In this document: positions 793 to 31,725 of the stretch, piece after piece
How the letters are laid out: every line of letters begins with the position of its first letter
How positions within the stretch are numbered: the first letter of the stretch is position 1
NCBI GenBank assembly: GCA_002269645.1
Contig: NIVC01004050.1
Span: forward strand, 1 to 31,725
Source: Macrostomum lignano
Taxonomy: Eukaryota
Direction: 5' to 3'
DNA length: 31,725 nucleotides
Position numbers and translations under genes: made by a program
Notes under the pieces: generated by a model
Database searches by the model: none
Seen by the model: only the letters and a program-made list of their open reading frames with translations
Told to the model about the DNA's origin: nothing

Positions 793-810
793 CATCCGCG
801 GGAGCACCCC

Positions 811-1150
811 AACTGCCAGCCGGAAAACTGCCAGCCGACAATTTCCAGCCGGAAAACTGCCAGCCGACAATTGCCAGTCGACAACTGCCAGCCGACAATT
901 GCCAGCTGAGAAAACTGCCAGCCGGAAAACTGCCAGCCGACAACTGCCAGCCGGAAAACTGCCAGCCGACAATTGCCAGCCGACAACTGCCAGCCGACAA
1001 CTGCCAGCCGACAACTGCCAGCTGAGAAAACTGCCAGCCGAAAACTGCCAGCCGACAACTGCCAGTCGACAATTGCCAATCGACAATTGCCAGCCGAGAA
1101 ATCTGCCAGCCGAGAAATCTGCCAGCCGACAACTGCCAGCCGACAAGTTC
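811..1150 (+). repeat. 14-15 bp tandem repeat (ACTGCCAGCCGACA), left arm of the foldback element
   Basis: About 24 units read directly, with variants GGAAA, GAGAAA and GTCGAC. Confidence 0.95.
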
Positions 1151-1642: not shown

Positions 1643-1860
1643 AACTTGTCGGCTGGCAATTGTCGACTGGCAATTGTCGGCTGGCAGTTGTCGGCTGGCA
1701 GTTGTCGACTGGCAGTTGTCGGCTGGCAGTTGTCGGCTGGCAGTTGTCGACTGGCAGTTGTCGGCTGGCAGTTGTCGGCTGGCAGTTGTCGGCTGGCAGT
1801 TGTCGACTGGCAGTTGTCGGCTGGCAGTTGTCGGCTGGCAGTTTTCCGGCTGGCAGTTGG
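1643..1860 (-). repeat. Reverse-complement array of the same 14-bp unit (TGTCGGCTGGCAGT), right arm
   Basis: About 15 units read directly. Confidence 0.95.
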
Positions 1861-6000: not shown

Positions 6001-9000
6001 CTGATGGGGCTCGGGAGACTGGGCTGATGGGGACTCGGGAGACTGGGCTGATGGGGACTCGGGAGACTGAGCTGATGGAGACTCGGGAGACTGGGCTTTT
6101 TGGGTGAGAACATCAGCATCCATTTAGTATATGGATGCTGATGGTCCAGTATTTGAGTTTCGTACCTGCAAACCATAATGATTTGATCCAGCGAGTGTCC
6201 CCTGTCTTCGGTTGGTACGTTGCAACCAAATCTCTCTTGAGACCTACGCTCGTAGGGTAGGATGACATTAGTTAGCCAAAGCCGTGTTTTCAATTTCTAC
6301 TATTTTGAATAAGATTTAATCCCATGTTTTACCTCGGATTTGATAAATATTAACGGTTGATTCTCTGTCACCCTTCCAATCGAAATTGACTTGACCCTGC
6401 AGTTGGGGACTTTATTCATTGTTATTTATGTTTCTGATGCAGTTTCAAGCCGTAGTGATGTGTTAAAGGAATGACAAAAAAGCATTGTACACTACAGCAG
6501 GCTTGTACACTACAGCAGGCTTGTACACTACAGCAGTCTTGTACACTACAGCAGTCTTGTACACTACAGCAGTCTTGTACACTACAGCAGTCTTGTACAC
6601 TACAGCAGTCTTGTACACTACAGCAGTCTTGTACACTACAGCAGTCTTGTACACTACAGCAGTCTTGTACACTACAGCAGGCTTGTACACTACAGCAGGC
6701 TTGTACACTACAGCAGTCTTGTACACTATATACACTTGAGCATTTCGGTACAACCTGCTGAACTTTTATCCTAGTTTAGGAGGCACCTCATCCTTATTCC
6801 AACAAACGGATATTGTTGTTTGTTGCCTTGATTTTCTTTAATTTCTACTCTTAGTAGTCGAGTGGCGCTGCTTTGCAATTGTTAATTATATAGCTTATTT
6901 TTCGCAGCATGGCGGCTCACTCACAACTGAACGAAGGCCAGGCATGTGTAGGGTAATATTTCAACTTCTAGATCTTCAACTTCATGCCCCGCTACCCTTC
7001 TGCTACTACTGAAAACAATTCCAACCTCGCAACGAAAGTTTAGTTTACAAGCATGGAACCGGGAGACAAGCAACTCACCGAAAGTCCATGAAAGTCCAGG
7101 CTGCGAACGTTCTCGAAGATTTTCTCTTTGAAACTCGAGCAGTCGAGGTCGGCAGGCTCGGCAGTGTAATTCTCGCCCTGCTCCAGGGTGGCGTTGATGG
7201 CCAGGGCGGCCGCCGTCACCGCGTCGAAACGCGTGTCGAAGCCGTTGAGGCCGTATTGCTGGGGGTTTGCGGTCCAGCTGCCGAACTGGCTGAGGAAGTC
7301 CTCGTAGGTCTCGTCTCTTGTCTGAAATTGTGCGGCCTACCCTCTGAAGAACTCGCTTGGAGATGTCACGACAGTCAGAGATGTCCCGATATATCTTGAC
7401 ATCGTGACATCTCTGACATCGTGACATCTCTGACATCGTGACATCTCTGACATCGTGACATCTTGACATCGTGACATCTTGACATCCTGACATCTTGACA
7501 TCGTGACATCTCTGACATCGTGACATCTTGACATCGGGACATCTTGGCATACTGTCATCGGGACATCGTGAAATCTTGGCATGCTGTCATCGAGACATCT
7601 TGACATCAGGACATCTTGGCATACTGTCATCAGGACAACTTACATACTGTCATCGAGACATCTTGCATACTGTCCATCGGGACATGTCGACACACTGTTA
7701 TCGGGACATCTTGACATACTGTCCATCGTGACATGTTGACATACTGTCCATCGGGACATGTTGACATACTATCATCGTGATATATGACAGTACACTATGA
7801 GGATGTTGCTGATATCCTGAGGACATCTTGAAAAATGGCATGCTGACTTAAAGATATGCTCTCAAATTAGCATCCTACATCTTAACATAATGACATATTA
7901 GTATCTTGACTTTATAGCATGACATCCTGACAACCTGGTGTCCGGACATACTGTTTATTTGCATACTGATATCCTGGCATTTTGACAAAATATCAGCACC
8001 GTGCTTGACTCTCTGACATTCTGGTTTTCAGCACCATAACGCGCTAACGTGATGGCATTGGGACATCGCAATTCTTACTCGACCCGTCAGTCCAGCAGGG
8101 TGCCTCGCTCCCGGATCCTCCGGGTCATTGTCCAGCACCATGGAGCCCTCCATGGCCACGGCTCGCTCGGAATCAGAGCAGCTTTCATTCTGATTGAGCC
8201 GCGTGGTTGACAGAAGCCCCATCTGAATCCACTGGTACTTGGGTCCGTACGCTCCCAGCCGCTTGATCTGTGTTTGTTAACGCTTTTTTTAGACTCTGTG
8301 CTAAACTGTAGCCTCCTTAAAGGTTCGGGTGTGGGAGATTCGGGTGTGGGAGATTCGGGTGTGGGAGATTCGGGTGTGGGTGGATTCTGTCTGGTGTGGG
8401 CGGATTCTGTCTGGTGTGGGCGGATTCTGTCTGGTGTGGGCGGATTCTGTCTGGTGTGGGCGGATTCTGTCTGGTGTGGGCGGATTCTGTCTGGTGTGGG
8501 CGGATTCTGTCTGGTGTGGGCGGATTCTGTCTGGTGTGGGCGGATTCTGTCTGGTGTGGGCGGATTCTGTCTGGTGTGGGCGGATTCGGATGTGGGTGGA
8601 ATCGTGTGTGGGTGGATTCGGGTGTGGGTGGATTCGGGTGTGGCTGGATTCGGGTGTGGCTGGATTCGGGTGTGGCTGGATTCGGGTGTGGCTGGATTCG
8701 GGTGTGGGTGGATTCGGGTGTGGCTGGATTCGGGTGTGGGTGGATTCGGGTGTGGGTGGATTCGGGTGTGGCTGGATTCGGGTGTGGGTGGATTCGTGTA
8801 TTGGGAGAGGCGGGTGTGGGTGGATTCGGGTGTGGGAGATTCGGGTGTGGGAGATTCGGGTGTGGGAGATTCGGGTGTGAGTGGATTCGGGTGTGGGTGG
8901 ATTCGGGTGTGGGTGGATTCGGGTGTGGGTGGATTCGGGTGTGGGTGGATTCGGGTGTGGGTGGATTCGGGTGTGGGTGGATTCGGGTGTGGCTGGATTC

Positions 9001-11907: not shown

Positions 11908-12591
11908 ATAAAAGAAGCGTCATGTCAAACATAAAAGAAGTGACATGTCAACCATAAAAGAAGTGCCATGTCAACCATAAAAGAAGTGACATGTGAAACA
12001 TAAAAGAAGTGACATGTCAAACATAAAAGATGTGCCATGTCAAACATAAAAGATGTGCCATGTCAAACATAAAAGAAGTGTCATGTCAAACATAAAAGAA
12101 GTGTCATGTCAAACATAAAAGAAGTGTCATGTCAACCATAAAAGAAGTGTCATGTCAACCATAAAAGAAGTGTCATGTCAAACATAAAAGAAGTGCCATG
12201 TCAAACATAAAAGAAGTGTCATGTCAACCATAAAAGAAGTGTCATGTCAACCATAAAAGAAGTGTCATGTCAAACATAAAAGAAGTGCCATGTCAAACAT
12301 AAAAGATGCTTCATGTCAAACATAAAAGAAGTGTCATGTCAACCATAAAAGAAGTGTCATGTCAAACATAAAAGAAGTGTCATGTCAACCATAAAAGAAG
12401 TGTCATGTCAAACATAAAAGAAGTGTCATGTCAAACATAAAAGAAGTGTCATGTCAACCATAAAAGAAGTGTCATGTCAAACATAAAAGAAGTGTCATGT
12501 CAACCATAAAAGAAGTGTCATGTCAAACATAAAAGAAGTGTCATGTCAAACATAAAAGATGCGTCATGTCAACCATAAAAAGTGTCATGTC
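11908..12591. repeat. 23-bp minisatellite (ATAAAAGAAGTGTCATGTCAA[A/C]C), ~30 copies, ~370 bp upstream of the gene A ATG
   Basis: Read directly. Confidence 0.95.
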
Positions 12592-14520: not shown

Positions 14521-14842
14521 ATCAAGTAGGCATGTTCTGATCCGTCAGAAAATCCAGTTCGGAATTGAAACGTCCAAGAAGCGAGTTCGCAGGGAGTCAC
14601 ATTTCAAGAGACTCATTTCTAGCCGTGTTGACTCGCCCAGTCCCGTTGGGGTCATTGTTGCACACCGTCCTCAGCACCGTGTTGGCGTCGGCGACTCTGA
14701 CGCGTCGGTCTTTGAGGATGGTCAGCACCTGGAATTCGATTTAGTCCGGATGTCCGATGGGGCTGCGAAGCACCTGAGATTCGCAATATCTCGTAAGCTA
14801 AGCCTCCAGCCTAGACCTCATCAGAAAGTAATACAAATTTAG

Positions 14843-15301
<459 letters not shown>

Positions 15302-15646
15302 TGATGCAGCAGGTCAGCAGCACGAGTCGCAGGTCCACCGAGCCGATGGGCAGCGCAATCTCCAGCACCACGCCGATCAGCCCCATCACGGTGGTGTTGT
15401 ACACGCAGATTCCGATCACCTTCGAGTCGTTCAGCGCTTCCACGTGAATTGTGCGAGTCTCCCAGGCAAAGAAGATTCCGAACAGAAGGAACACCGCCTT
15501 CATGCCGATGATGAGGCCCTTCCACAGCACCTCGCTGCTGGACTGACACACGACCAGCTTGTGCAGAACCACAGCTCCGTCAGAGATCATGTCCTGCATT
15601 GGCATGGCACTGCATGTCAGTGGAATGTCAGTGCAATGTCAGAAAT

Positions 15647-16361
15647 CACACTGCACACCCTGTTACCTGCACAGACAGTCTCTTGTGAGTGCAGAGTACA
15701 GAATCACTGCACACCCTGTTACCTGCTCAGACAGTCTCTTGTGAATGCAGAGTACAGAATCACTGCACACCCTGTTACCTGCTCAGACAGTCTCTTGTGA
15801 ATGCAGAGTACAGAATCACTGCACACCCTGTTACCTGCACAGACAGTCTCTTGTGAGTGCAGAGTACAGAATCACTGCACACCCTGTTACCTGCTCAGAC
15901 AGTCTCTTGTGAGTGCAGAGTACAGAATCACTGCACACCCTGTTACCTGCTCAGACAGTCTCTTGTGAATGCAGAGTACAGAATCACTGCACACCCTGTT
16001 ACCTGCTCAGACAGTCTCTTGTGAATGCAGAGTACAGAATCATTGCAGATCCTGTCACCAGCTCAGACAGTCTTTTGTGAATGCAGAGTACAGAATCACT
16101 GCACACCCTGTCACCTGCTCAGACAGTCTCTTGTGAATGCAGAGTACAGAATCACAGCACACCCTGTTACCTGCTCAGACAGTCTCTTGTGAATGCAGAG
16201 TACAGAATCACACTGCACACCCTGTTACCTGCTCAGACAGTCTTTTGTGAATGCAGAGTACAGAATCACACTGCACACCCTGTTACCTGCTCAGACAGTC
16301 TCTTGTGAATGCAGAGTACAGAATCACTGCACACCCTGTTACCTGCTCAGACAGTCTCTTG
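15647..16361 (-). repeat. 56-bp junction minisatellite (~13 copies) in intron 11 of gene B
   Basis: Same unit as 4133-5236; true junction at 16343/16342. Confidence 0.95.
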
Positions 16362-16954
16362 ACAGCCAAGGCTGGTGAATCCAGGAGTCCGAGAGCCAAC
16401 AGCAGTCCAGCATCCATCAGCAGAATAGCGGCAATCACCATGCAGAGGTGCCAGTCCTTGATGGTCTGAAATCCGGTAATGCGTGACCAGGCTGGCTCAA
16501 GGTCATTCAGGGGACTGACTATACACGAGCACTGCAGTGCAGATGGACTCACAGTCAGCCTCATCTTGTTGGTGAAGATTCTGTGGACTCGCCACGTCTT
16601 GGCCAGAATTCCACCGAAGGCGCACGAGTAGCCAGTGATGAGGCAGAGCAGCTGGGACCAGCACAGTCCGAGCTGGCTTCCCATGTACGCGTTGAAGGTC
16701 ATGATGAAGCAGGACGCGTGGCACAGGAGGCAGCCCAGTCCGATGATGGTGTTCACGATGGGGCTGCTGAGCCGGATGTAGGGCACCTTGCGGAACCACA
16801 GGTTCACCGCCATGGCGGTCAGGGTGAGGCAGGCGCCGCAGGCAGACATGCCGCCAGAGACCACGGCGCTGACGAGGCTGGCGTGGACGAGCTTTGAGAG
16901 GATTCTGGGAGAGTCGACTGGAGCTGAGCCGCCTGCGGGACGGGGTGGGAGATG

Positions 16955-17420
16955 CGCTGATGGGGCTCGGGAGACTGGGCTGATCTGGATTCGGGAGACT
17001 GGGCTGATGGGGACTCGGGATACTGGGCTGATGGTGGTTTCGGAGACTGCACTGATGGGGACTCGGGAGACTACACTGATGGGGACTCGGGAGACTGGGC
17101 TGATGGGGTCTCGGGAGACTGGGCTGATGGGTAACTCGGGAGACTGGGCTGATGGGGACTCGGGAGACTGAGCTGATGGGGTCTCGGGAGACTGGGCTGA
17201 TGGGTAACTCGGGAGGCTGGGCTGATGAGGTCTCGGGAGACTGAGCTGATGAGGGACTCTCGAGACTGGGCTGATTGGGACTCGGGAGACTGGGCTGATT
17301 GGGACTCGGGAGACTGGGCTGATTGGGACTCGGGAGACTGGGCTGATTGGGACTCGGGAGACTGGGCTGATGGGGACTCGGGAGACTGAGCTGATGAGTG
17401 ACTCTGGAGACTGGGCTGAT
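16955..17420. repeat. 24-bp G-rich repeat in intron 9 of gene B
   Basis: About 19 units, more variable than in A. Confidence 0.9.
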
Positions 17421-17798
17421 GGGGGGGGGAAATTCGAAAGGGTTAGGGTTAGGGATGGAGTGTTGATGGCCTAGCATTTGAATGGCGTACCCTCGAACCA
17501 CAGTGGTTTGATCCAGCGACTGTCCCCCGTCTTCGGTTGATAAGTTGCAACCAAATCTCTCTTGAGACCTAGGGTAGGATGACACTCGTTGGCAATGTTC
17601 GTGCGTATAATTTAAATTTTTAGAATAAGACTTAATCCCATGTCTTACCTCGGATTTGGTAAATAATAACGGTAGGTTCTCTGTCGCCCTTCGAATCAAA
17701 ATTGACGGGACCCTGCAGTTGTTGCTTTATTCGTTGTTATGCATGTTTGTGATGCGGTAAAAAGCTATAGTGATTTGCAAAGGAATAACAAAATACTC

Positions 17799-18070
17799 TT
17801 GTACACTATTGCAGTCTTGTACACTGTTGCAGTCTTGTACACTGTACTAGTCTTGTACACTGTACTAGTCTTGTACACTGTACTAGTCTTGTACACTGTA
17901 CTAGTCTTGTACACTGTACCAGTCTTGTACACTGTACTAGTCTTGTACACTGTACTAGTCTTGTATACTGTACTAGTCTTGTAAACTATAGAAGTCTTGT
18001 ACATTATAGCCTTCTTGTATACAACAGCAGTCTTGTACACTATAGCAGTCTTGTACACTTTATACACTTG
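17799..18070. repeat. 18-bp repeat (TGTACACTGTACTAGTCT) in intron 7 of gene B, ~15 copies
   Basis: Read directly; the consensus differs from copy A. Confidence 0.95.
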
Positions 18071-18254
18071 AGAATTCTGGTACAACCTGATGAAATTGTA
18101 CCCCTGTTTAAAATGCGATTCATCATCATTCCAAGGAACGAATATTCTTGTTCTTTTCCTTAGGTATCCTTTAATTTCTACTCTTAGTAGTGGACTGGCG
18201 CAGAGAAGCATTTATCTTTATATTGTAGCGCCTTGTTTCCGACTGTCCTTGCGT

Positions 18255-19008
18255 AATATAGCTTTTTGCAGCCCATTTGGGCTTACGCGCATCGAATTCA
18301 ATCCAAGATATGTTTGTCAAAGTAATGGAGCTTTTGTCTATGGCAGCAAGGCTGGCACAGCGGCATTTAATTTGGCCCAACAAGCATCAATTTGGTCCAT
18401 TTAGTTCATTTGTAGCTCAGTCCCAGAATTGTGGACCATATGCTAGGCTGTTGAACGAATGTCATTGGCTTGTGATCGAAGCACTCGACGGAGGTGAACA
18501 CCCAAAGGACATTGCAAGGTTGCTGAATGTAAAAGAAAAGGTGGTTTACAGCATCCAGCAGCGCGTTGAAACTCTGCTGGCAGAGATTGCCTGCGAAAGG
18601 GTGGCAATCGCCAAGGAAAGTTGCTCGAGAGCCTCAGGTCCAACTGCTGCTCGATGCAGTGGAGACGAACCCTTTGTTGACGTTGCCGAAATGCAGCAGA
18701 AGTTGAGGGAACAGCTCCAGTTGGTTATCAGATTTTGACTATCAGCAGAGCTCTGGAAAAGCAACTAAAAATTGCTGGTAGAGACGCTGACATTCCAGTG
18801 GTGCGCAATAACCTGCAGACGGTTGAGAGAAGGCAAGAGTTTGTCCAATGGCTCACGAGTGTTTGGACCAAATGGATGCTTGTTGGACCAAATTAAATGC
18901 CGCTGCGCCAGCCTTGCTACCATAGACAAAAGCTCTGTTACATTGGCAAACATATCTTGGATTAAATAAAATGCGCGTAGGCCCAAATGGGCTGCAAAAT
19001 ACTATATA
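18255..19008. mobile_element. Inverted-repeat element (~145-bp diverged arms) enclosing an HTH-like coding remnant; probable non-autonomous DNA transposon
   Basis: Arms 18255-18399 and 18864-19008 (TATAGCTTTTTGCAGCCCATTTGGG...TGGTCCA and its mirror). The internal + strand frame reads LVIEALDGGEHPKDIARLLNVKEKVVYSIQQR (~18470-18570). No DDE domain is visible. Confidence 0.6.
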
Positions 19009-19859
19009 TAATAACTTTCTTTTGATTGCCCACAAGCTAGGTTGTCTATGACCCAAACTCCAACTTTCGGTTTCAGCCCCAAACCAACTGTACTTTATTT
19101 TTATTAAATAGACGCGATCGCCCCCCAGTCAAGGTTTAACCTTTCGCTCAACTTAATCAATCATCTTCATCTTTTGGTAGCCAGCGCTACAATATTTAAC
19201 TTCTCGAATAGCGGCGTGCTTTCTGACGTCTGAGCATGAGACGCAGGCGTATTTCAATTAACTTCGCATTAACGCCTCCGCTTCCCGCCCCTGCTAACTG
19301 ACTACTGAGGGCAATTTCAAACACATTTCGCCTGGGCCTGGTGGGCGGATGCGGGCTGCCCACCGATGGCCATCCGCTTGTCGTCGAGCGGATTCACCAG
19401 ATGTGTGGTGCTGTTTTCCGTTAAAATATGATAACACAGAATTCTGGTTGATTATTGACTACGAAGCATGCCGTAGGTGGACTTTTTGTTTAAATCCTGC
19501 TCGCTTTTTCGGATTTTCGGATCTCGCAATGAGATTTCAGTCTGCTAGCATGGAACCGGGAGACAAGCAACTCACCGAAAGTCCATGAAAGTCCAGGCTG
19601 CGAACGTTCTCGAAGATTTTCTCTTTGAAACTCGAGCAGTCGAGGTCGGCAGGCTCGGCAGTGTAATTCTCGCCCTGCTCCAGGGTGGCGTTGATGGCCA
19701 GGGCGGCCGCCGTCACCGCGTCGAAACGCGTGTCGAAGCCGTTGATGCCGGATCTCAGGGGGTTTGCGGTCCAGCTGCCGAACTGGCTGAGGAAGTCCTC
19801 GTAGGTCTCGTCTCTTGTCTGAAATTGTGCGGCCTACCCTCTGAAGAACTCGCTTCAGA

Positions 19860-20050
19860 GATGTCACGACAGTCAGAGATGTCCCGATATATCTTGACAT
19901 CGTGACATCTCTGACATCGTGACAACTTGACATCGTGACATCTCTGACATCGTGACATCTTGACATCGTGACGTCTTGACATCGTGACGTCTTGACATCG
20001 TTGACGTCTTGACATCGGGACATCTTGGTATCTGCCATCGGGACATCTTA
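19860..20050. repeat. TGACATC-core repeat in intron 6 of gene B
   Basis: Read directly; shorter than in A. Confidence 0.85.
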
Positions 20051-20699
20051 ATATCCTAGAATATTTACATCCTAAAAACATCTTGACAAATGGCATTCTG
20101 GCTTAAAAACATCCTGACTTAAAGACATCCTGACATAATAGCATCCTTACATATCAACATCCTGGCACATTAGCACCCTTACATCTTAAACATAATGACA
20201 TATTAGCATCTTGACTTTGTAGCATGACATCCTGACGTCCTGGCGTCCGATATTACAATACCGATATGAAATTACCGATATATTTGCAGCCTAGCGGACA
20301 TACTGATATTCTGACATTTTGACAAAATATCGGCACTATGCTTGACTCTCAAACATTCCTGGTTCTCAGCACCATGACGTCCTGACAGTATGACAACTTA
20401 AAGCTTTGAAATTTCGACATGTCGAAGTTCTGACATTCAGACATCGCAATTCTTACTCGACCCGTCAGTCCAGCGGGGTTCCTCCTCCCCGGATCCTCCT
20501 GGTCATTGTCCAGCACTATGGAACCCTCCATGGCCACGGCTCGCTCGGAATCAGAGCAGCTTCCATTATGATTGAGCTGCGTGGTTGCCGGAAGCCCCAT
20601 CTGAATCCACTGGTACTTGGGTCCGTACGCTCCCAGCCGCTTGATCTGTGTTTGTTAGCGCTTTTTTTAGACTCCGTGTTAAACCGTTACTGATCTCAA

Positions 20700-21825
20700 G
20701 ATTCGGAGGTGGGTGGATTCGGGTCTGGGAGATTGAGGTCTGAGAGATTCGAGTGTGGGAGATTCGGGGGTGGGAGATTCGGGTGTGGGAGATTCAGGTG
20801 TGGGAGATTCGGGTGTGGAAGATTCGGGTGTGGGAGATTCGGGTGTGGAAGATTCGGGTCTGGGAGATTCGGGTGTGGAAGATTCGGGTGTGGGAGATTC
20901 GGGTGTGGAAGATTCGGGTCTGGGAGATTCGGGTGTGGAAGATTCGGGTCTGGGAGATTCGGGTCTGGGAGATTCGGGTCTGGGAGATTCGGGTCTGGGA
21001 GATTCGGGTGTGGGTGGATTCGTGTATTGGGAGATTCGTGTATTGGGAGATTCGGGTGTGGAAGATTCGGGTGTGGGAGATTCGGGTGTGGAAGATTCGG
21101 GTCTGGGAGATTCGGGTCTGGGAGATTCGGGTGTGGGAGATTCGGGTGTGGGAGATTCGGGTGTGGGAAATTCGGGTGTGGAAGATTCGGGTGTGGGAGA
21201 TTCGGGTGTGGAAGATTCGGGTCTGGGAGATTCGGGTCTGGGAGATTCGGGTCTGGGAGATTCGGGTCTGGGAGATTCGGGTGTGGGTGGATTCGTGTAT
21301 TGGGAGATTCGTGTATTGGGAGATTAGGGTGTGGAAGATTCGGGTGTGGGAGATTCGGGTGTGGAAGATTCGGGTCTGGGAGATTCGGGTGTGGGAGATT
21401 CGGGTGTGGGAGATTCGGGTGTGGGAGATTCGGGTGTTGGAAATTCGGGTGTGGAAGATTCGGGTGTGGGAGATTCGGGTGTGGAAGATTCCGGTCTGGA
21501 GATTCGGGTGTGGGAGATTCGGGTGTGGGAGATTCGGGTGTGGGTGGATTCGGGTGTGGGTGGATTAGGGAGTGGGTGGATACGGGTGTGGTTGGATTTG
21601 GGTGTGGGTGGATTCGGGTGTGGTTGGATTTGGGTGTGGGTGGATTCGGGTGTGGTTGGATTTGGGTGTGGGTGGATTCGGGTGTGGTTGGATTTGGGTG
21701 TGGGTGGATTCGGGTGTGGTTGGATTTGGGTGTGGGTGGATTCGGGTGTGGTTGGATTCGGGTGTGGGTGGATTCGTGTGTGGGTGGATTCGGGTGTGGT
21801 TGGATTTGGGTGTGGGTGGATTCGG
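20700..21825. repeat. G-rich 15-16 bp repeat (GATTCGGGTGTGGGA/GAA) in intron 5 of gene B
   Basis: Read directly. Confidence 0.95.
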
Positions 21826-22452
21826 TGCCCTACCACGCAGTCCAGCCGCTTATCCGACTGTTCAGCGGCGATCGAGCGAACAGCGATGAAGATTCGAATG
21901 TCCTTTTGCTGCAAATCATAATAAGTAAACTCACTGCGATAGTTTTATAATTTAAATTGTTTATGTTAAAAATTATTGACGTGAGAAATTATCACTTACC
22001 AGAAGGCTTGTCAGGGCGGCAGTGGCGTCAGTAAAGTACATCCGTTTGGAATAGCTGATGTTGCGGGCCATGAAATCTGTCTCCAGCTCGCTGGCCACCT
22101 GGAAGAAATCGTTTAACAAAAAAACTTCTTTTATCGCGCACTGACTGCATAAGTGACATTTAGTGACACACAGTGACACACAGTGACTCACAGTCACACA
22201 CAGTGACACCATCTGTTGCACAAGTGTGACACAGATGACGCACATATCTACTCACCGATTTGAATGCGGAGTAGTCTTGAACTAGAAAGCCGATCTTCTT
22301 CCAATTGAACTTGGTCACAATTGACACCAACGGTTTCACATAGACGTTAAAAGTAGTGGACATTCTCGTGTAGTACGGGTAGATCGACCGATCGCTTAGT
22401 TCCGGCGACAGATTCAGGCCAATCTGAAAATTATGGAATTAAATCATAACAA

Positions 22453-25400
22453 AGTCACACAGTTTAGCCACAGTCTCTCACCTGAGTCACACAGTTTAGC
22501 CACAGTCTCTCACCTGAGTCACACAGTTTAGCCACAGTCTCTCACCTGAGTCACACAGTTTAGCCACAGGCTCTCACCTGAGTCACAGTTTAGCCACAGG
22601 CTCTCACCTGAGTCACACAGTTTAGCCACAGTCTCTCTCCTGAGTCACACAGTTTAGCCTCAGTCTCTCACCTCAGTCACACAGTTTAGCCACAGTCTCT
22701 CTCCTGAGTCACACAGTTTAGCCACAGTCTCTCACCTGAGTCACACAGTTTAGTCACAGTCTCTCACCTGAGTCACACAGTTTAGTCACAGTCTCTCACC
22801 TGAGTCACACAGTTTAGCCACAGTCTACCACCTGAGTCACACAGTTTAGTCACAGTCTCTCACCTGAGTCACACAGTTTAGCCTCAGTCTCTAACCTGAG
22901 TCACACAGTTTAGCCTCAGTCTCTCACCTGAGTCACACAGTCTAGCCACATTCTCTCACCTGAGTCACACAGTTTAGCCTCAGTCTCTCACCTGAGTCAC
23001 ACAGTTAGCCACAGTCTCTCACCTGAGTCACACAGTTTAGCCACAGTCTCTCACCTGAGTCACACAGTTTAGCCACAGTCTCTCACCTGAGTCACAGTTT
23101 AGCCTCAGTCTCTCACCTGAGTCACACAGTTTAGTCACAGTCTCTCACCTGAGTCACACAGTTTAGCCACAGTCTCTCACCTGAGTCACACAGTTTAGCC
23201 ACAGTCTCTCACCTGAGTCACACAGTTTAGCCACAGTCTCTCACCTGAGTCACAGAGTTGAGTCACAGTCTCTCACCTGAGTCACACAGTTGAGTCACAG
23301 TCTCTCACCTGAGTCACACAGTTTAGTCACAGTCTCTCACCTGAGTCACACAGTTTAGCCACAGTCTCTCACCTGAGTCACACAGTCTAGCCACAGTCTC
23401 TCACCTGAGTCACACAGTTTAGCCTCAGTCTCTAACCTGAGTCACACAGTTTAGCCTCAGTCTCTCACCTTAGTCACACAGTCTAGCCACATTCTCTCAC
23501 CTGAGTCACACAGTTTAGCCTCAGTCTCTCACCTTAGTCACACAGTCTAGCCACAGTCTCTCACCTGAGTCACACAGTTTAGCCACAGTCTCTCACCTGA
23601 GTCACACAGTTTAGCCACAGTCTCTCACCTGAGTCACAGTTTAGCCTCAGTCTCTCACCTGAGTCACACAGTCTAGCCTCAGTCTCTCACCTGAGTCACA
23701 CAGTTTAGCCACAGTCTCTCACCTGAGTCACACAGTTTAGTCACAGTCTCTCACCTGAGTCACACAGTTTAGCACAGTCTCTCACCTGAGTCACACAGTT
23801 GAGTCACAGTCTCTCACCTGAGTCACACAGTTTAGTCACAGTCTCTCACCTGAGTCACACAGTTGAGTCACAGTCTCTCACCTGAGTCACACAGTTTAGC
23901 CACAGTCTCTCACCTGAGTCACACAGTCTAGCCTCAGTCTCTCACCTCAGTCACACAGTTTAGCCACAGTCTCTCTCCTGAGTCACACAGTTTAGCCACA
24001 GTCTCTCACCTGAGTCACACAGTTTAGTCACAGTCTCTCACCTGAGTCACACAGTTTAGTCACAGTCTCTCACCTGAGTCACACAGTTTAGTCACAGTCT
24101 CCCACCTGAGTCACACAGTTTAGTCACAGTCTCTCACCTGAGTCACACAGTTTAGCCTCAGTCTCTAACCTGAGTCACACAGTTTAGCCTCAGTCTCTCA
24201 CCTTAGTCACACAGTCTAGCCACATTCTCTCACCTGAGTCACACAGTTTAGCCTCAGTCTCTCACCTTAGTCACACAGTCTAGCCACAGTCTCTCACCTG
24301 AGTCACACAGTTTAGCCACAGTCTCTCACCTGAGTCACAGTTTAGCCTCAGTCTCTCACCTGAGTCACACAGTCTAGCCTCAGTCTCTCACCTGAGTCAC
24401 ACAGTTTAGCCACAGTCTCTCACCTGAGTCACACAGTTTAGCCACAGTCTCTCACCTGAGTCACACAGTTTAGCCACAGTCTCTCACCTGAGTCACACAG
24501 TTGAGTCACAGTCTCTCACCTGAGTCACACAGTTTAGTCACAGTCTCTCACCTGAGTCACACAGTTGAGTCACAGTCTCTCACCTGAGTCACACAGTTTA
24601 GCCACAGTCTCTCACCTGAGTCACACAGTCTAGCCTCAGTCTCTCACCTGAGTCACACAGTTTAGTCACAGTCTCCCACCTGAGTCACACAGTTTAGTCA
24701 CAGTCTCTCACCTGAGTCACACAGTTTAGCCTCAGTCTCTAACCTGAGTCACACAGTTTAGCCTCAGTCTCTCACCTGAGTCACACAGTCTAGCCACATT
24801 CTCTCACCTGAGTCACACAGTTTAGCCTCAGTCTCTCACCTTAGTCACACAGTCTAGCCACAGTCTCTCACCTGAGTCACACAGTTTAGCCACAGTCTCT
24901 CACCTGAGTCACACAGTTTAGCCACAGTCTCTCACCTGAGTCACACAGTTTAGCCACAGTCTCTCACCTGAGTCACACAGTTTAGTCACAGTCTCTCACC
25001 TGAGTCACACAGTCTAGGCACAGTCTCTCACCTGAGTCACACAGTTGAGTCACAGTCTCTCACCTGAGTCACACAGTTTAGTCACAGTCTCTCACCTGAG
25101 TCACACAGTTGAGTCACAGTCTCTCACCTGAGTCACACAGTTTAGCCACAGTCTCTCACCTGAGTCACACAGTCTAGCCTCAGTCTCTCACCTCAGTCAC
25201 ACAGTTTAGCCACAGTCTTTCTCCTGAGTCACACAGTTTAGCCACAGTCTCTCACCTGAGTCACACAGTTTAGTCACAGTCTCTCACCTGAGTCACACAG
25301 TTTAGTCACAGTCTCTCACCTGAGTCACACAGTTTAGTCACAGTCTCCCACCTGAGTCACACAGTTTAGTCACAGTCTCTCACCTGAGTCACACAGTTTA

Positions 25401-28400
25401 GCCTCAGTCTCTCACCTTAGTCACACAGTCTAGCCACATTCTCTCACCTGAGTCACACAGTTTAGCCTCAGTCTCTCACCTTAGTCACACAGTCTAGCCA
25501 CAGTCTCTCACCTGAGTCACACAGTTTAGCCACAGTCTCTCACCTGAGTCACAGTTTAGCCTCAGTCTCTCACCTGAGTCACACAGTTTAGCCTCAGTCT
25601 CTCACCTGAGTCACACAGTTTAGCCACAGTCTCTCACCTGAGTCACACAGTTTAGTCACAGTCTCTCACCTGAGTCACACAGTTTAGCCACAGTCTCTCA
25701 CCTGAGTCACACAGTTGAGTCACAGTCTCTCACCTGAGTCACACAGTTTAGTCACAGTCTCTCACCTGAGTCACACAGTTAGCCTCAGTCTCTCACCTGA
25801 GTCACACAGTTTAGTCACAGTCTCTCACCTGAGTCACACAGTTTAGTCACAGTCTCTCACCTGAGTCACACAGTTTAGTCACAGTCTCTCACCTGAGTCA
25901 CACAGTTTAGTCAGTCTCTCACCTGAGTCACACAGTTTAGCCACAGTCTCTCACCTGAGTCACACAGTTTAGCCACAGTCTCTCACCTGAGTCACACAGT
26001 TTAGCCTCAGTCTCTCACCTGAGTCACACAGTTAGCCTCAGTCTCTCACCTGAGTCACACAGTTTAGCCACAGTCTCTCACCTGAGTCACACAGTTTAGC
26101 CACAGTCTCTCACCTGAGTCACACAGTTTAGCCACAGTCTCTCACCTGAGTCACACAGTTTAGCCACAGTCTCTCACCTGAGTCACACAGTTTAGTCACA
26201 GTCTCTCACCTGAGTCACACAGTTAGTCACAGTCTCTCACCTGAGTCACACAGTTTAGCCACAGTCTCTCACCTGAGTCACACAGTTTAGCCTCAGTCTC
26301 TCACCTGAGTCACACAGTTTAGCCACAGTCTCTCACCTGAGTCACACAGTTTAGCCACAGTCTCTCACCTGAGTCACACAGTTTAGTCACAGTCTCTCAC
26401 CTGAGTCACACAGTTTAGTCCACAGTCTCTCACCTGAGTCACACAGTTTAGTCACAGTCTCTCACCTGAGTCACACAGTTTAGTCACAGTCTCTCACCTG
26501 AGTCACACAGTTTAGTCAGTCTCTCACCTGAGTCACACAGTTTAGTCACAGTCTCTCACCTGAGTCACACAGTTTAGTCACAGTCTCTCACCTGAGTCAC
26601 ACAGTTTAGCCTCAGTCTCTCACCTGAGTCACACAGTTTAGCCTCAGTCTCTCACCTGAGTCACACAGTTTAGCCACAGTCTCTCACCTGAGTCACACAG
26701 TTTAGCCACAGTCTCTCACCTGAGTCACACAGTTTAGCCTCAGTCTCTCACCTGAGTCACACAGTTTAGCCTCAGTCTCTCACCTGAGTCACACAGTTTA
26801 GCCACAGTCTCTCACCTGAGTCACACAGTTTAGCCACAGTCTCTCACCTGAGTCACACAGTTTAGCCACAGTCTCTCACCTGAGTCACACAGTTAGCCTC
26901 AGTCTCTCACCTGAGTCACACAGTTTAGCCACAGTCTCTCACCTGAGTCACACAGTTTAGCCACAGTCTCTCACCTGAGTCACACAGTTAGCCTCAGTCT
27001 CTCACCTGAGTCACACAGTTTAGTCACAGTCTCTCACCTGAGTCACACAGTTTAGTCACAGTCTCTCACCTGAGTCACACAGTTTAGCCACAGTCTCTCA
27101 CCTGAGTCACACAGTTTAGCCTCAGTCTCTCACCTGAGTCACACAGTTTAGCCTCAGTCTCTCACCTGAGTCACACAGTTTAGTCACAGTCTCTCACCTG
27201 AGTCACACAGTTTAGCCACAGTCTCTCACCTGAGTCACACAGTTTAGCCACAGTCTCTCACCTGAGTCACACAGTTTAGCCACAGTCTCTCACCTGAGTC
27301 ACACAGTTTAGCCACAGTCTCTCACCTGAGTCACACAGTTTAGCCACAGTCTCTCACCTGAGTCACACAGTTTAGCCACAGTCTCTCACCTGAGTCACAC
27401 AGTTTAGCCTCACAGTCTCTCACCTGAGTCACACAGTTTAGCCACAGTCTCTCACCTGAGTCACACAGTTTAGCCACAGTCTCTCACCTGAGTCACACAG
27501 TTTAGCCACAGTCTCTCACCTGAGTCACACAGTTTAGCCACAGTCTCTCACCTGAGTCACACAGTTTAGCCACAGTCTCTCACCTGAGTCACACAGTTTA
27601 GTCACAGTCTCTCACCTGAGTCACACAGTTTAGTCACAGTCTCTCACCTGAGTCACACAGTTTAGCACAGTCTCTCACCTGAGTCACACAGTTTAGCCAC
27701 AGTCTCTCACCTGAGTCACACAGTTTAGCCACAGTCTCTCACCTGAGTCACACAGTTTAGCCACAGTCTCTCACCTGAGTCACACAGTTTAGTCACAGTC
27801 TCTCACCTGAGTCACACAGTTTAGTCACAGTCTCTCACCTGAGTCACACAGTTTAGTCACAGTCTCTCACCTGAGTCACACAGTTTAGTCACAGTCTCTC
27901 ACCTGAGTCACACAGTTTAGCACAGTCTCTCACCTGAGTCACACAGTTTAGCCACAGTCTCTCACCTGAGTCACACAGTTTAGCCACAGTCTCTCACCTG
28001 AGTCACACAGTTTAGCCAGTCTCTCACCTGAGTCACACAGTTTAGCCACAGTCTCTCACCTGAGTCACACAGTTTAGCACAGTCTCTCACCTGAGTCACA
28101 CAGTTTAGCACAGTCTCTCACCTGAGTCACACAGTTTAGTCACAGTCTCTCACCTGAGTCACACAGTTTAGTCACAGTCTCTCACCTGAGTCACACAGTT
28201 TAGTCACAGTCTCTCACCTGAGTCACACAGTTTAGCCACAGTCTCTCACCTGAGTCACACAGTTTAGCCTCACAGTCTCTCACCTGAGTCACACAGTTTA
28301 GTCACAGTCTCTCACCTGAGTCACACAGTTTAGTCACAGTCTCTCACCTGAGTCACACAGTTTAGTCACAGTCTCTCACCTGAGTCACACAGTTTAGCCT

Positions 28401-30460
28401 CAGTCTCTCACCTGAGTCACACAGTTTAGCCACAGTCTCTCACCTGAGTCACACAGTTTAGCCTCAGTCTCTCACCTGAGTCACACAGTTTAGCCACAGT
28501 CTCTCACCTGAGTCACACAGTTTAGCCACAGTCTCTCACCTGAGTCACACAGTTTAGTCACAGTCTCTCACCTGAGTCACACAGTTTAGTCACAGTCTCT
28601 CACCTGAGTCACACAGTTTAGTCACAGTCTCTCACCTGAGTCACACAGTTTAGCCACAGTCTCTCACCTGAGTCACACAGTTTAGTCACAGTCTCTCACC
28701 TGAGTCACACAGTTTAGTCACAGTCTCTCACCTGAGTCACACAGTTTAGTCACAGTCTCTCACCTGAGTCACACAGTTTAGCACAGTCTCTCACCTGAGT
28801 CACACAGTTTAGCCTCAGTCTCTCACCTGAGTCACACAGTTTAGCCACAGTCTCTCACCTGAGTCACACAGTTTAGCCACAGTCTCTCACCTGAGTCACA
28901 CAGTTAGCCTCAGTCTCTCACCTGAGTCACACAGTTTAGCCACAGTCTCTCACCTGAGTCACACAGTTTAGCCACAGTCTCTCACCTGAGTCACACAGTT
29001 TAGCACAGTCTCTCACCTGAGTCACACAGTTTAGCCACAGTCTCTCACCTGAGTCACACAGTTTAGCCACAGTCTCTCACCTGAGTCACACAGTTTAGCC
29101 ACAGTCTCTCACCTGAGTCACACAGTTTAGCCACAGTCTCTCACCTGAGTCACACAGTTTAGCCACAGTCTCTCACCTGAGTCACACAGTTTAGCCACAG
29201 TCTCTCACCTGAGTCACACAGTTTAGCCACAGTCTCTCACCTGAGTCACACAGTTAGCCTCAGTCTCTCACCTGAGTCACACAGTTTAGCCACAGTCTCT
29301 CACCTGAGTCACACAGTTTAGTCACAGTCTCTCACCTGAGTCACACAGTTTAGTCACAGTCTCTCACCTGAGTCACACAGTTTAGCACAGTCTCTCACCT
29401 GAGTCACACAGTTTAGCCTCAGTCTCTCACCTGAGTCACACAGTTTAGCCACAGTCTCTCACCTGAGTCACACAGTTTAGCCTCAGTCTCTCACCTGAGT
29501 CACACAGTTTAGCCACAGTCTCTCACCTGAGTCACACAGTTTAGCCACAGTCTCTCACCTGAGTCACACAGTTTAGCCACAGTCTCTCACCTGAGTCACA
29601 CAGTTTAGCCACAGTCTCTCACCTGAGTCACACAGTTTAGCCACAGTCTCTCACCTGAGTCACACAGTTTAGCCACAGTCTCTCACCTGAGTCACACAGT
29701 TTAGCCACAGTCTCTCACCTGAGTCACACAGTTTAGCCACAGTCTCTCACCTGAGTCACACAGTTTAGCCACAGTCTCTCACCTGAGTCACACAGTTTAG
29801 CCTCAGTCTCTCACCTGAGTCACACAGTTTAGCCTCAGTCTCTCACCTGAGTCACACAGTTAGCCTCAGTCTCTCACCTGAGTCACACAGTTTAGCCACA
29901 GTCTCTCACCTGAGTCACACAGTTAGCCTCAGTCTCTCACCTGAGTCACACAGTTTAGCCACAGTCTCTCACCTGAGTCACACAGTTTAGCCACAGTCTC
30001 TCACCTGAGTCACACAGTTTAGCCACAGTCTCTCACCTGAGTCACACAGTTTAGCCAGTCTCTCACCTGAGTCACACAGTTTAGCCACAGTCTCTCACCT
30101 GAGTCACACAGTTTAGCCACAGTCTCTCACCTGAGTCACACAGTTTAGCCACAGTCTCTCACCTGAGTCACACAATTTAGCCACAGTCTCTCACCTGAGT
30201 CACACAGTAGCCACAGTCTCTCACTTGAGTCACACAGTAGCCACAGTCTCTCACCTGAGTCACACAGTTTAGCCACAGTCTCTCACCTGAGTCACACAGT
30301 CTAGCCACAGTCTCTCACCTGAGTCACACAGTTTAGTCACAGTCTCTCACCTGAGTCACACAGTTTAGTCACAGTCTCTCACCTGAGTCACACAGTTTAG
30401 CCACAGTATCTCACCTCAGTCACACAGTTTAGTCACAGTCTCTCACCTGAGTCACACAGT
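22453..30460 (-). repeat. 8-kb satellite of a 32-bp unit (~250 copies) filling intron 2 of gene B; the unit is the exon 2 end plus splice donor
   Basis: Plus-strand unit CACAGTCTCTCACCTGAGTCACACAGTTTAGC. It is continuous into exon 2 at 30447-30460. Copy number is estimated as ~8008/32. Confidence 0.97.
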
Positions 30461-30959
30461 AGTAGCGCGGGCCAGCTCAGCAATGACCTGAGACTGCTGC
30501 GAGAAGCTGGCGCCCAGCATCAGCGCCTTGTTGCTGCCACTGAGGTAGCCGTCAACAAATGCCTTCAGAGCGGCGCCAACGTCTTCCTGCTGTTAATTGT
30601 GTATTTGAGTTGCGTTGCATTTACTTAATTGTGGCGACAAAATCTCCACTGATTGTAAAATTTCCATGGCGAAAAGCAATCAGTCTTAAAGGTTTAATTT
30701 AATCAAATTCACTCTTGAAGCGTTTTGAAGCTCTCAGCATAGTAACTGAGAGTTGTTGACTTCTGCTGAGAACAATATCGCTGTTTCTTTATATACGGGA
30801 GTTCGTGTCCACCTTTCGCTTTAGAATTCGAACAATGGACCAGCATGTATGCGCCATAAATTACACTTTGTATTAAAATTTTCCTTACAGACAACAATAT
30901 TGCTACTGATTTGTTAAATTACTTGGGGATTGTAACAAATTCAATTTTTTGATGCTCAT

Positions 30960-31003
30960 CTAGATAACTAACTAGCTAACTAACTAACTAGATAACTAAC
31001 TAG

Positions 31004-31070
<67 letters not shown>

Positions 31071-31071
31071 G

Positions 31072-31115
<44 letters not shown>

Positions 31116-31262
31116 TACTAACTAACTAACTAACTAACTAACTAACAACCTAACTAACTAACTAACTAACTAAGTAACTAACTTACTAACTTACTAACTA
31201 ACTAACTTACAACTTACTAACTAACTAACTTACTAACTAACTAACTAACTAACTAACTAAGT
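30960..31262. repeat. (TAAC)n microsatellite in intron 1 of gene B
   Basis: Read directly. Confidence 0.95.
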
Positions 31263-31725
31263 AATTCTTGCAATAAACAAGAAAAACGTCAAGTTCGCAA
31301 CAAAATAACAAAGTACCCCTTTGATTAGTCGAATGTCGGGCCTCAGCTTGAAGCTTGGAAACAATTCCATCCTGGTGTTCAAGTATCGGATCGAATAGTT
31401 GAAATAATGGACCTCGTTGAAGAATGGAATTTCCTTGGAAATGGCAATGAGGATGTGCACTTCCGGCCTGTCGTCCGCCGGTTGGAGACGACAGCGGTCA
31501 GACAGGCGACTGCCAGCAGAAATTTCAGGGGCAAGCGCATGCTGCCGCAGAGCTGAGACTAGTGAGTATAGACTGGGCTGCTCGAGCGACAGCTCAGAGA
31601 GTTTCGATGCTCAGTTGATTTTGAGAGATTTATCACCTGCTAATAACTGTTCGCGACTTCTGATTGGGCGATTGGGTGAACAGGCTTTTTCAGGTCCATC
31701 CGCTATGCTAAAAAGTGGTTTTACC

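What the first reader, a model, noticed from the sequence alone, without database searches (positions are those of the whole stretch)
22453..30460. An 8-kb satellite made of ~250 tandem copies of the gene's own exon 2/intron 2 splice junction
On the sense strand each 32-bp unit is ACTGTGTGACTCAG|GTGAGAGACTGTGGCTAA, i.e. the last 14 nt of exon 2 plus a strong donor (CAG|GTGAGA, close to the U1 consensus). The intron grows from 122 bp in A to 8023 bp in B. Extending the exon to any downstream copy passes an immediate in-frame TAA (GTG AGA GAC TGT G(G/A)C TAA), so every decoy is a poison choice. The pre-mRNA would carry hundreds of U1 sites. Possible roles are a copy-number splicing/NMD rheostat, a U1 sponge, or a self-silencing route to pseudogenisation; these roles are inference. 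Variation mostly sits outside the CTCAG|GTGAG core.
Basis: partly seen in the sequence, partly recalled or inferred. Interest (0 to 1): 0.9.

Follow-up and report, generated by a model that had tools for sequence, protein, structure and literature searches.

The report
Splice-donor minisatellite in a flatworm gene
An 8-kb intron of a flatworm (Macrostomum lignano) receptor gene copy really is about 250 tandem repeats of the exon-end-plus-splice-donor sequence. This kind of repeat is already known from several human genes, and here it sits in a gene copy that looks recently broken, so it is most likely a tolerated expansion rather than a regulatory device.

Summary
Window 22453..30460 holds 251 head-to-tail 32-bp units, each made of the last 14 nt of exon 2, the donor CAG|GTGAGA and 12 more intron bases. 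Intron 2 is 8023 nt in paralog B and 122 nt (3.3 units) in paralog A. Reading through the donor meets an in-frame TAA after 5 codons.

The window is Macrostomum lignano and carries two tandem paralogs of a class-C GPCR. Minisatellites inflate 9 of 12 introns. A second array (56-bp unit; 19 junction copies in A, 13 in B) also reiterates an exon end plus donor, and it does so in the intact paralog A.

Paralog B has 2-bp insertions in exons 1 and 2, so its ORF stops at residue 54. It is otherwise open, with dN/dS 0.31 against A, so it is a young pseudogene or carries assembly errors. Distinct variant types are not depleted in the donor core, so I see no sign of constraint there.

The same architecture is described for human F7, IFI6, CBS, LMNB2, PDGF and ABCA7. 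ABCA7 alleles reach 9.7 kb. In those genes the most upstream donor is used.

My verdict is a new, very large member of a known kind. The rheostat, NMD and U1-sponge roles are unsupported. A link to pseudogenisation is possible but its direction is unresolved.

The parts
22453..30460 (-). 32-bp minisatellite of 251 units. The sense unit is ACTGTGTGACTCAG|GTGAGAGACTGTGGCTAA. The first 14 nt of the first unit (30447..30460) are the end of exon 2 of paralog B. The array ends in a truncated unit, ACTGTGTGACT.
22424..30446 (-). Intron 2 of paralog B, 8023 nt when the first donor is used. Only the last 29 nt (22424..22452, ...TTGTTATGATTTAATTCCATAATTTTCAG) are not repeat.
30447..30589 (-). Exon 2 of paralog B, 143 nt against 141 nt in A. 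A 2-bp insertion (CG) at 30468..30469, 8 nt upstream of the array (one 11-nt alignment block before the 14-nt repeat tail), turns AELARYYCVTQ into AELARATTV-stop.
31317..31540 (-). Exon 1 of paralog B (signal peptide). A 2-bp insertion (GG) at 31478..31479 makes the raw ORF stop at residue 54.
22256..22423 (-). Exon 3 of paralog B (IGLNLSPELSDRS...), with its acceptor ttttcag| intact.
14597..31540 (-). Paralog B of a class-C GPCR gene (ANF_receptor + 7tm_3). It has 13 exons and all GT-AG sites are kept. The ORF is open except for the two 2-bp insertions.
3084..11538 (-). Paralog A, with 13 exons, all GT-AG, and an intact 754-codon ORF.
10405..10511 (-). The same minisatellite in paralog A, with 3.3 units (3 donors). 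It has the same start 14 nt inside exon 2 and the same truncated last unit. Intron 2 is 10376..10497, 122 nt.
4134..5236 (-). Second donor-spanning minisatellite, in paralog A. The 56-bp unit is the last ~19 nt of a 7TM exon, the donor CAG|GTAACA and 31 nt more. There are 19 junction copies. Read-through meets TGA after 6 codons.
15649..16361 (-). The same 56-bp donor-spanning minisatellite in paralog B, with 13 junction copies.
3403..3732 (-). 12-bp G/T-rich minisatellite that overlaps the donor GGT|GTGAGG of the last 7TM exon by 4 nt, in paralog A. Its counterpart in B is at 14916..15246.

Best explanation
This is a junction-spanning intronic minisatellite (VNTR-type array) in Macrostomum lignano.

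Origin. A 32-bp segment covering the last 14 nt of exon 2 and the first 18 nt of intron 2 became tandemly duplicated. The likely route is slippage between the 11-nt direct repeat ACTGTGTGACT at the exon end and 32 nt downstream (inferred). This happened before the A/B gene duplication, because both paralogs share the same array start and the same truncated last unit (shown).

Expansion. In paralog B the array then grew to 251 units by unequal exchange or replication slippage. The imperfect higher-order blocks of about 19-22 units in the acceptor-proximal third are the trace of this (shown). The genome routinely fills introns with minisatellites.

Why it is tolerated. Such a duplication leaves the authentic first donor with its full exon context, and all further copies lie inside the intron. 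Only the 29-nt branch/acceptor end stays unique.

Expected behaviour. By analogy with the human cases, the most upstream donor is used, the downstream copies are largely silent, and at most a few percent of transcripts retain one unit and meet the TAA. Any length effect would act through reduced output or downstream exon skipping rather than decoy choice (inferred from F7 and ABCA7, not tested here).

State of paralog B. It carries two frameshifting 2-bp insertions in exons 1 and 2 but is otherwise an open reading frame under past purifying selection. The giant expansion therefore most likely sits in a copy that has just escaped selection.
For: Array and unit anatomy.

Organism and genome background: the organism is M. 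lignano, shown by 100%-identical UniRef fragments. [quoted passage not shown]

Splicing at the first donor: the UniRef models P0001 and P0005 join ...ARYYCVTQ|IGLN... at the first donor. The Pfam ANF_receptor match runs uninterrupted across that junction.

Gene models: A has an intact 754-codon ORF. B has the same 13 exons and splice sites but +2 bp in E1 and +2 bp in E2, and it stops at residue 54. With those insertions removed, dN/dS is 0.31.

Intron table:
- 9 of 12 introns hold arrays.
- Array-free introns are 80-91 nt.
- Three arrays overlap a donor (by 14, 19 and 4 nt).
- No array overlaps an acceptor.

Second example: the 56-bp array reiterates the exon end plus donor 19 times in intact A and 13 times in B.

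No sign of selection or of another function: donor-core variant types are not depleted (7 of 17 against 4.8 expected). There is no Rfam hit and no RNA structure signal (z = 0.43).

Shared array boundaries in A and B. Higher-order blocks.

Precedents: F7, IFI6, CBS, LMNB2 and PDGF, where the first monomer spans the exon-intron boundary and the upstream donor is used (PMC1557585). ABCA7 has a 25-bp VNTR that includes the exon 18 donor, with alleles from 0.3 to 9.7 kb (PMC5954066).
Against: No transcript data could be examined, so donor usage in this species is inferred from mammals. In vitro work on duplicated strong donors has sometimes favoured the intron-proximal site (my knowledge, not checked here), which would make every transcript of B, and of the 56-bp intron in A, a poison isoform.

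The two 2-bp insertions could be assembly errors. In that case B would be an intact gene carrying 250 decoys, and neutrality would be less obvious.

Three donor-overlapping arrays against zero acceptor-overlapping arrays hints at something non-random that pure neutrality does not explain.

The array length rests on a single assembly.
Confidence: 0.7

Rival explanations
1. The expansion itself crippled paralog B. An 8-kb repeat intron lowered output or disturbed splicing (exon 3 skipping, decoy use), selection on B relaxed, and the two frameshifts followed. On this reading the array is the cause of pseudogenisation, not a passenger.
For: B is otherwise an open ORF with dN/dS 0.31 and all 24 splice sites intact, so its death is very recent. 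The array is by far the largest structural difference between A and B. In human ABCA7 longer donor-containing VNTR alleles give about 33% lower expression and 3-4 times more skipping of the downstream exon (PMC5954066).
Against: The order of events cannot be read from the sequence. The ABCA7 effect is modest and not gene-killing. Mean intron length in this species is 1.1-1.4 kb, so an 8-kb intron is long but not extreme. The intact paralog A tolerates a 1.1-kb array with 19 copies of another donor junction.
Confidence: 0.13
2. The array is a selected cis-regulatory device: decoy donors feed poison (PTC) isoforms to NMD, and copy number sets the dose.
For: The decoys are strong donors, with 227 of 251 units identical to the authentic 11-mer. 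The TAA is in frame. In human IFI6 and CBS the two pseudo-sites nearest the authentic donor are used (PMC1557585).
Against: There is no depletion of variant types in the donor core. The copy with 251 units has frameshifts upstream of and within exon 2, so there is no protein output to tune. The intact copy has only 3 units. In ABCA7 one-unit retention is about 2% and independent of length, with no NMD effect. [quoted passage not shown] The locus carries about 12 arrays per gene copy, and their copy numbers differ freely between A and B.
Confidence: 0.05
3. Assembly artefact: the array length, the 2-bp insertions, or both were produced by assembling a very repetitive genome from noisy long reads.
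For: The M. lignano genome is notoriously hard to assemble (PMC5730564). UniRef models from an earlier assembly of the same gene family are full of frame errors (P0003, P0004, P0007, P0010). Only one assembly of the locus was available to me, since look-ups of other copies failed.
Against: The array has a structured interior that an assembly artefact would be unlikely to produce: 32 variants, a homogeneous exon-proximal part, and imperfect higher-order blocks in the acceptor-proximal part. Its boundaries match paralog A to the base. The insertions are 2-bp CG/GG, not the single-base indels I would expect of long-read error (my knowledge, not checked here).
Confidence: 0.08
4. U1 snRNP sponge: the pre-mRNA titrates U1 through about 250 binding sites.
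For: Only the number and quality of the sites.
Against: U1 is among the most abundant nuclear RNAs (established knowledge), and a receptor gene paralog that looks like a pseudogene is unlikely to be transcribed at a level that matters. Nothing here points to high expression.
Confidence: 0.01

Closest known systems
Human F7 intron 7 37-bp minisatellite (Borensztajn et al. 2006, PMC1557585)
   Same: The first monomer spans the exon-intron boundary, so the authentic donor is followed by identical pseudo-donors. The array lies wholly in the intron when the first donor is used.
   Different: F7 has 5-9 units with 4 nt of exon per unit and a weak donor (UGG|gugggu). Here there are 251 units with 14 nt of exon per unit and a strong donor (CAG|GTGAGA). 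Use of the first donor is demonstrated for F7 and only inferred here.
Human ABCA7 intron 18 25-bp VNTR (De Roeck et al. 2018, PMC5954066)
   Same: It is an intronic VNTR that starts at and includes the splice donor. Alleles range from 0.3 kb to 9.7 kb, the same size range as this array. Using the second donor retains one unit and gives a frameshift and PTC.
   Different: The ABCA7 unit starts at the GT and contains no exon bases. Length polymorphism and its effects (lower expression, skipping of the next exon) were measured in people. Here only two paralogs in one assembly are seen, and the long copy is in a frameshifted gene.
Other human junction-spanning minisatellites: IFI6 (6-16) intron 2, CBS intron 13, LMNB2, PDGF intron 4 (listed in PMC1557585)
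   Same: The donor is reiterated 10-25 times in the intron, and the authentic donor, or the first few donors, are used.
   Different: Copy numbers there are about ten times lower. Those are functional single-copy genes, not a paralog pair in which one copy is expanded.
Intron gain or sliding by tandem duplication of a segment containing AGGT (Rogers model; Hellsten et al. 2011, PMC3265369; Lehmann et al. 2010, PMC2891723; listed, abstracts only read)
   Same: A tandem duplication that copies a splice signal is neutral, because splicing removes the extra copy.
   Different: Those cases create a new intron from exon sequence with one duplication. Here an existing intron is inflated by hundreds of copies.

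Membership tests
Junction-spanning intronic minisatellite (F7 IVS7 / ABCA7 intron 18 type) | Head-to-tail array of units of about 10-100 bp | tested here: met
   Period 32, 251.3 copies, 95% matches. Segmentation gives 251 units.
Junction-spanning intronic minisatellite (F7 IVS7 / ABCA7 intron 18 type) | The first monomer spans the exon-intron boundary, so the authentic donor sequence is reiterated in the intron | tested here: met
   The unit's first 14 nt are the last 14 nt of exon 2 in both paralogs. There are 247 matches to the junction 20-mer against 0 expected.
Junction-spanning intronic minisatellite (F7 IVS7 / ABCA7 intron 18 type) | Using the first donor gives the correct, conserved protein | tested here: met
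   The first-donor join gives ...ARYYCVTQ|IGLNLSPE..., identical to UniRef models P0001 and P0005. It lies inside one continuous ANF_receptor match. The full A model is an open 754-codon ORF.
Junction-spanning intronic minisatellite (F7 IVS7 / ABCA7 intron 18 type) | In vivo the most upstream donor(s) are used and the downstream copies stay silent | not testable with these tools
   No transcript data for this species could be reached. Look-ups failed.
Junction-spanning intronic minisatellite (F7 IVS7 / ABCA7 intron 18 type) | Copy number varies between alleles | not testable with these tools
   Only one assembly is available. Between paralogs the number differs 3.3 against 251.
Unprocessed pseudogene (paralog B) | Reading frame disrupted while the exon-intron structure is retained | tested here: met
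   There is +2 bp in E1 and +2 bp in E2, and the raw ORF stops at residue 54. All 13 exons and all GT-AG sites are present. Caveat: the insertions could be assembly errors.
Unprocessed pseudogene (paralog B) | Relaxed constraint (dN/dS near 1) or loss of expression | tested here: not met
   dN/dS between A and B is 0.31, so any inactivation is too recent to show. Expression could not be tested.
Alternative-splicing-coupled NMD element (poison splice site under selection) | The alternative site introduces a PTC upstream of later exon junctions | tested here: met
   An in-frame TAA follows 5 codons after the first donor, and 11 introns lie downstream.
Alternative-splicing-coupled NMD element (poison splice site under selection) | The element is conserved or constrained | tested here: not met
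   7 of 17 distinct substitution types fall in the donor 9-mer against 4.8 expected. Copy number differs about 75-fold between paralogs. The long copy sits in a frameshifted gene.
Alternative-splicing-coupled NMD element (poison splice site under selection) | The alternative site is used in vivo and its products respond to NMD | not testable with these tools
   No RNA data.
Classical satellite DNA | Very long arrays at many or heterochromatic loci | not testable with these tools
   In this window the unit occurs only in intron 2 of A and B. The rest of the genome could not be searched.

The most novel reading that the evidence does not exclude
Donor-spanning minisatellites may be a recurrent, mechanistically favoured feature of M. 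lignano genes rather than accidents. In this one gene 3 of 9 intronic arrays overlap a donor and none overlaps an acceptor. If that bias holds genome-wide, it would point to one of two things. Array birth or expansion could be coupled to 5' splice sites, for example through transcription- or U1-associated instability. Alternatively, copy number could be used to damp individual paralogs in tandem gene families.
Probability: 0.1. Interest if true: 0.6.

Novelty: new member of a known kind. Interest (0 to 1): 0.3.

Why it matters
The locus offers a natural experiment in 5' splice-site choice. Two 97%-identical paralogs lie side by side. One has 3 and the other 251 identical strong donors behind the same exon. 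A second intron carries 19 against 13 copies of another donor. If transcripts can be assigned to A and B, the mammalian rule that the most upstream donor wins can be tested in a distant animal and at a copy number matched only by the largest human ABCA7 alleles.

It also matters for annotation. Gene predictors on this genome have produced chimeric and frameshifted models across these arrays (P0003, P0004, P0006, P0010), and paralog B should be flagged as a probable pseudogene.

It does not currently provide evidence for a new regulatory mechanism.

Tried and rejected
- Other assemblies or transcripts of the locus. Exact-protein look-ups for P0001 and P0004 found nothing, and the spliced A protein was not accepted. 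Array length and donor use therefore could not be checked independently.
- A paralogous M. lignano locus. L001 (NIVC01001840.1) has many intergenic minisatellites, about 22% of 22.7 kb, but none inside the gene. It gave no further junction-spanning examples.
- Structured or known RNA. There is no Rfam family in the window. Four units of sense RNA fold no better than shuffles (z = 0.43).
- Coding potential of the array. The 32-nt period is not a multiple of 3, and the unit carries TAA/TGA on the sense strand and TAG/TGA on the other strand, so no long ORF is possible (read directly from the unit).
- Selection on the donor core. Rejected, because distinct variant types are not depleted there.
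- Exon end derived from the repeat (exonisation). Rejected, because ...YYCVTQ|IGL... lies inside the conserved ANF_receptor domain and is shared with a more distant paralog, P0005.
- Frame rescue in B by a downstream donor. Rejected: the exon 1 frameshift stops inside exon 1, and the exon 2 frameshift gives TGA 5 nt before the first donor (TGA CTCAG|GT).
- My first guess at exon 8. An ORF at about 7000..6924 was wrong. tblastn with P0005 placed the true exons at 6396..6333 and 6243..6166.
Full report
**1. What is in the sequence**

Tandem Repeats Finder finds a 32-bp array at 22453..30460 with 251.3 copies, 95% matches and score 14431. A 3.3-copy version of the same unit lies at 10405..10511.

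On the sense (minus) strand, dynamic-programming segmentation gives 251 units in 32 distinct variants. The consensus is ACTGTGTGACTCAGGTGAGAGACTGTGGCTAA. The exact CTCAG|GTGAGA is kept by 227 units. The junction 20-mer occurs 247 times with at most 1 mismatch, against 0 in 100 shuffles, always on the minus strand and only in these two arrays.

The unit's first 14 nt equal the last 14 nt of the upstream exon in both places.

**2. The gene and the organism**

The window holds two tandem paralogs on the minus strand: A at 3084..11538 and B at 14597..31540. They are 95-97% identical over most unique sequence.

Translated exons hit ANF_receptor and 7tm_3, which makes this a class-C, GABA-B-like GPCR. 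They match Macrostomum lignano UniRef fragments at 100% identity.

I used the near-full-length paralog model P0005 as a guide and built a 13-exon model for A. Every intron is GT-AG and the ORF is an intact 754 codons.

The exon 2 / exon 3 join at the first donor gives ...ARYYCVTQ|IGLNLSPE.... That matches P0001 and P0005. It also lies inside one continuous ANF_receptor match. The first donor is therefore the productive one, and the exon tail is ancestral coding sequence, not repeat-derived.

With that donor, intron 2 is 122 nt in A and 8023 nt in B. Read-through meets TAA after 5 codons.

**3. Context: a locus full of minisatellites**

Nine of the 12 introns in each paralog carry tandem arrays, with periods of 4 to 56 bp. 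The three array-free introns are 80-91 nt. Several introns are 76-100% repeat.

Copy numbers differ freely between A and B:

| Array | Copies in A | Copies in B |
|---|---|---|
| 24-bp unit | 2.3 | 12.3 |
| 56-bp unit | 19.7 | 12.7 |
| CTAA | 43 | 76 |

[quoted passage not shown] A paralogous locus from the public assembly is likewise about 22% minisatellite.

The 32-bp array is not the only one that copies a splice junction. The 56-bp array in the intron after the second 7TM exon has as its unit the last ~19 nt of the exon (CAAGAGACTGTCTGAGCAG) plus the donor GTAACA. It has 19 junction copies in the intact paralog A and 13 in B, and read-through gives TGA after 6 codons.

A 12-bp G/T-rich array overlaps a third donor by 4 nt, and a 16-bp array starts at intron position +9. 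No array comes closer than 14 nt to an acceptor.

If each array is reduced to one unit, the ancestral introns come out at roughly 60-110 nt. A 32- or 56-bp duplication then had a sizeable chance of straddling a boundary (inference). Duplications straddling the donor are harmless if the first donor keeps being used. Duplications straddling the acceptor presumably are not.

**4. History of the array**

A and B share the array's start (14 nt inside exon 2). They also share its end: a truncated unit ACTGTGTGACT followed by TTGTTATGATTTAATT(T/C)CATAATTTTCAG. The array was therefore born before the gene duplication and later expanded in B, or shrank in A.

The exon-proximal ~150 units are dominated by five variants. 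The acceptor-proximal ~75 units (about 25.6-23.3 kb) show imperfect repeats of blocks of about 19-22 units (CJHGIG...BLBBA..RADBD), at spacings of 544-1214 bp. That is the signature of unequal exchange.

**5. Is there constraint on the donors?**

By copies, variants are under-represented in the 9-nt donor: 25 of 167 against 47 expected. That count is driven by two amplified variants at unit positions 26 and 28.

By distinct substitution types, which is a better proxy for independent mutations, 7 of 17 lie in the donor 9-mer against 4.8 expected. I see no evidence that the donor core is protected.

The array has no Rfam match and no unusual RNA folding. It cannot encode a long ORF.

**6. State of paralog B**

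B keeps all 13 exons and all splice sites. It has a 2-bp insertion in exon 1 (31478..31479), which turns SNPDDRPEV into SNRRTTGRK... and stops at residue 54. It has another in exon 2 (30468..30469, 8 nt upstream of the array), which turns AELARYYCVTQ into AELARATTV-stop.

With both insertions removed, B is an open 754-codon ORF. It differs from A at 68 of 2265 nt, and dN/dS is 0.31. B is therefore either a very young pseudogene or an intact gene with two assembly errors. I cannot decide between these here.

Divergence is mosaic, from 0% in the last exon to 13-14% in exons 8a and 8b. This suggests exchange among family members.

**7. Comparison with what is known**

The architecture is described in the literature. 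Borensztajn et al. [quoted passage not shown]

| Human gene and intron | Unit and copy number |
|---|---|
| F7 intron 7 | 37 bp, 5-9 copies |
| IFI6 (6-16) intron 2 | 25 pseudo-sites |
| CBS intron 13 | 15-20 copies |
| LMNB2 | 100 bp, 10-15 copies |
| PDGF intron 4 | 81 bp, 16-18 copies |

De Roeck et al. (PMC5954066) describe a 25-bp VNTR that includes the ABCA7 exon 18 donor. Its alleles range from about 0.3 to 9.7 kb, the size range seen here. They report three relevant results:
- Use of the second donor (one-unit retention, out of frame) is about 2% of transcripts and independent of length.
- Longer alleles lower expression by about a third.
- Longer alleles raise skipping of the next exon 3-4 fold.

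The present array is therefore a new and very large member of a known kind, in a flatworm. It is not a new kind.

**8. Mechanism and rivals**

Best explanation (0.7). This is a tolerated junction-spanning minisatellite that expanded by unequal exchange in a repeat-prone genome. The first donor is used and the rest are largely silent. The extreme expansion sits in a copy that has just lost, or is losing, function.

Rivals:
- The expansion caused B's decline through length-dependent loss of output or exon skipping (0.13). This is compatible with the ABCA7 data, but the order of events is unknown.
- A selected decoy/NMD rheostat (0.05). Against it are the lack of constraint, the frameshifts upstream of the array, and the human data.
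- An assembly artefact in the array length or the insertions (0.08).
- A U1 sponge (0.01).

Shown here: the anatomy, the shared origin in A and B, B's frameshifts, the second donor-spanning array, and the lack of donor-core constraint. Inferred: the slippage origin, which donor is used, neutrality, and the order of events.

**9. Verdict**

Its functional ideas are mostly unsupported, and the phenomenon has clear precedents. Interest is moderate to low (0.3). The main value of the locus is as a natural test bed for 5' splice-site selection and as an annotation warning.

Noticed in passing
window 4134..5236 (paralog A) and 15649..16361 (paralog B), minus strand: A second minisatellite copies a splice junction. 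Its 56-bp unit is the last ~19 nt of a 7TM exon plus the donor CAG|GTAACA. There are 19 junction copies in the intact paralog A and 13 in B. Read-through meets an in-frame TGA after 6 codons.
   Followed up: yes
window 3403..3732 and 14916..15246; 8324..9456 and 20699..21825: A 12-bp G/T-rich array overlaps the donor GGT|GTGAGG by 4 nt, and a 15/16-bp array begins at intron position +9. Overall 3 of 9 intronic arrays overlap a donor and none comes within 14 nt of an acceptor. Array-free introns are 80-91 nt.
   Followed up: partly
window 31478..31479 and 30468..30469: Two 2-bp insertions (GG in exon 1, CG in exon 2) break the reading frame of paralog B, which is otherwise open with dN/dS 0.31 against A. 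B is either a young pseudogene or carries assembly errors.
   Followed up: yes
window 18256..19007 (intron E7-E8a of paralog B only): A ~750-bp insertion is absent from paralog A. It has 144-nt terminal inverted repeats (90% complementary) around 464 nt. An overlapping ORF has a weak, sub-threshold winged-helix HTH_29 match. It looks like a small non-autonomous DNA transposon.
   Followed up: partly
window 810..1146 and 1646..1859: Two arrays of the same 14-bp unit (CAACTGCCAGCCGA) lie in opposite orientation about 500 bp apart, downstream of paralog A. Older gene models (P0006) translate through them (...RQLPADNCQPT...), which is probably mis-annotation.
   Followed up: no
exons of A against B (e.g. 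6166..6396 against 17491..17712; 3084..3215 against 14597..14728): Divergence between the paralogs is mosaic: 13-14% in exons 8a and 8b, 4-7% in exons 2-4 and 6, and 0-0.3% in the last two exons. This suggests gene conversion or exchange with other family members.
   Followed up: partly
unit sequences at 22453..30460 and 4134..5236: The 32-bp and 56-bp units share the 9-mer AGAGACTGT on the sense strand. It lies just after the donor in one unit and just before it in the other. This may be coincidence and is unexplained.
   Followed up: no
window 11908..12591: A 23-bp minisatellite of about 30 copies (ATAAAAGAAGTGTCATGTCAAAC) lies in the spacer between the 3' end of B and the 5' end of A.
   Followed up: no
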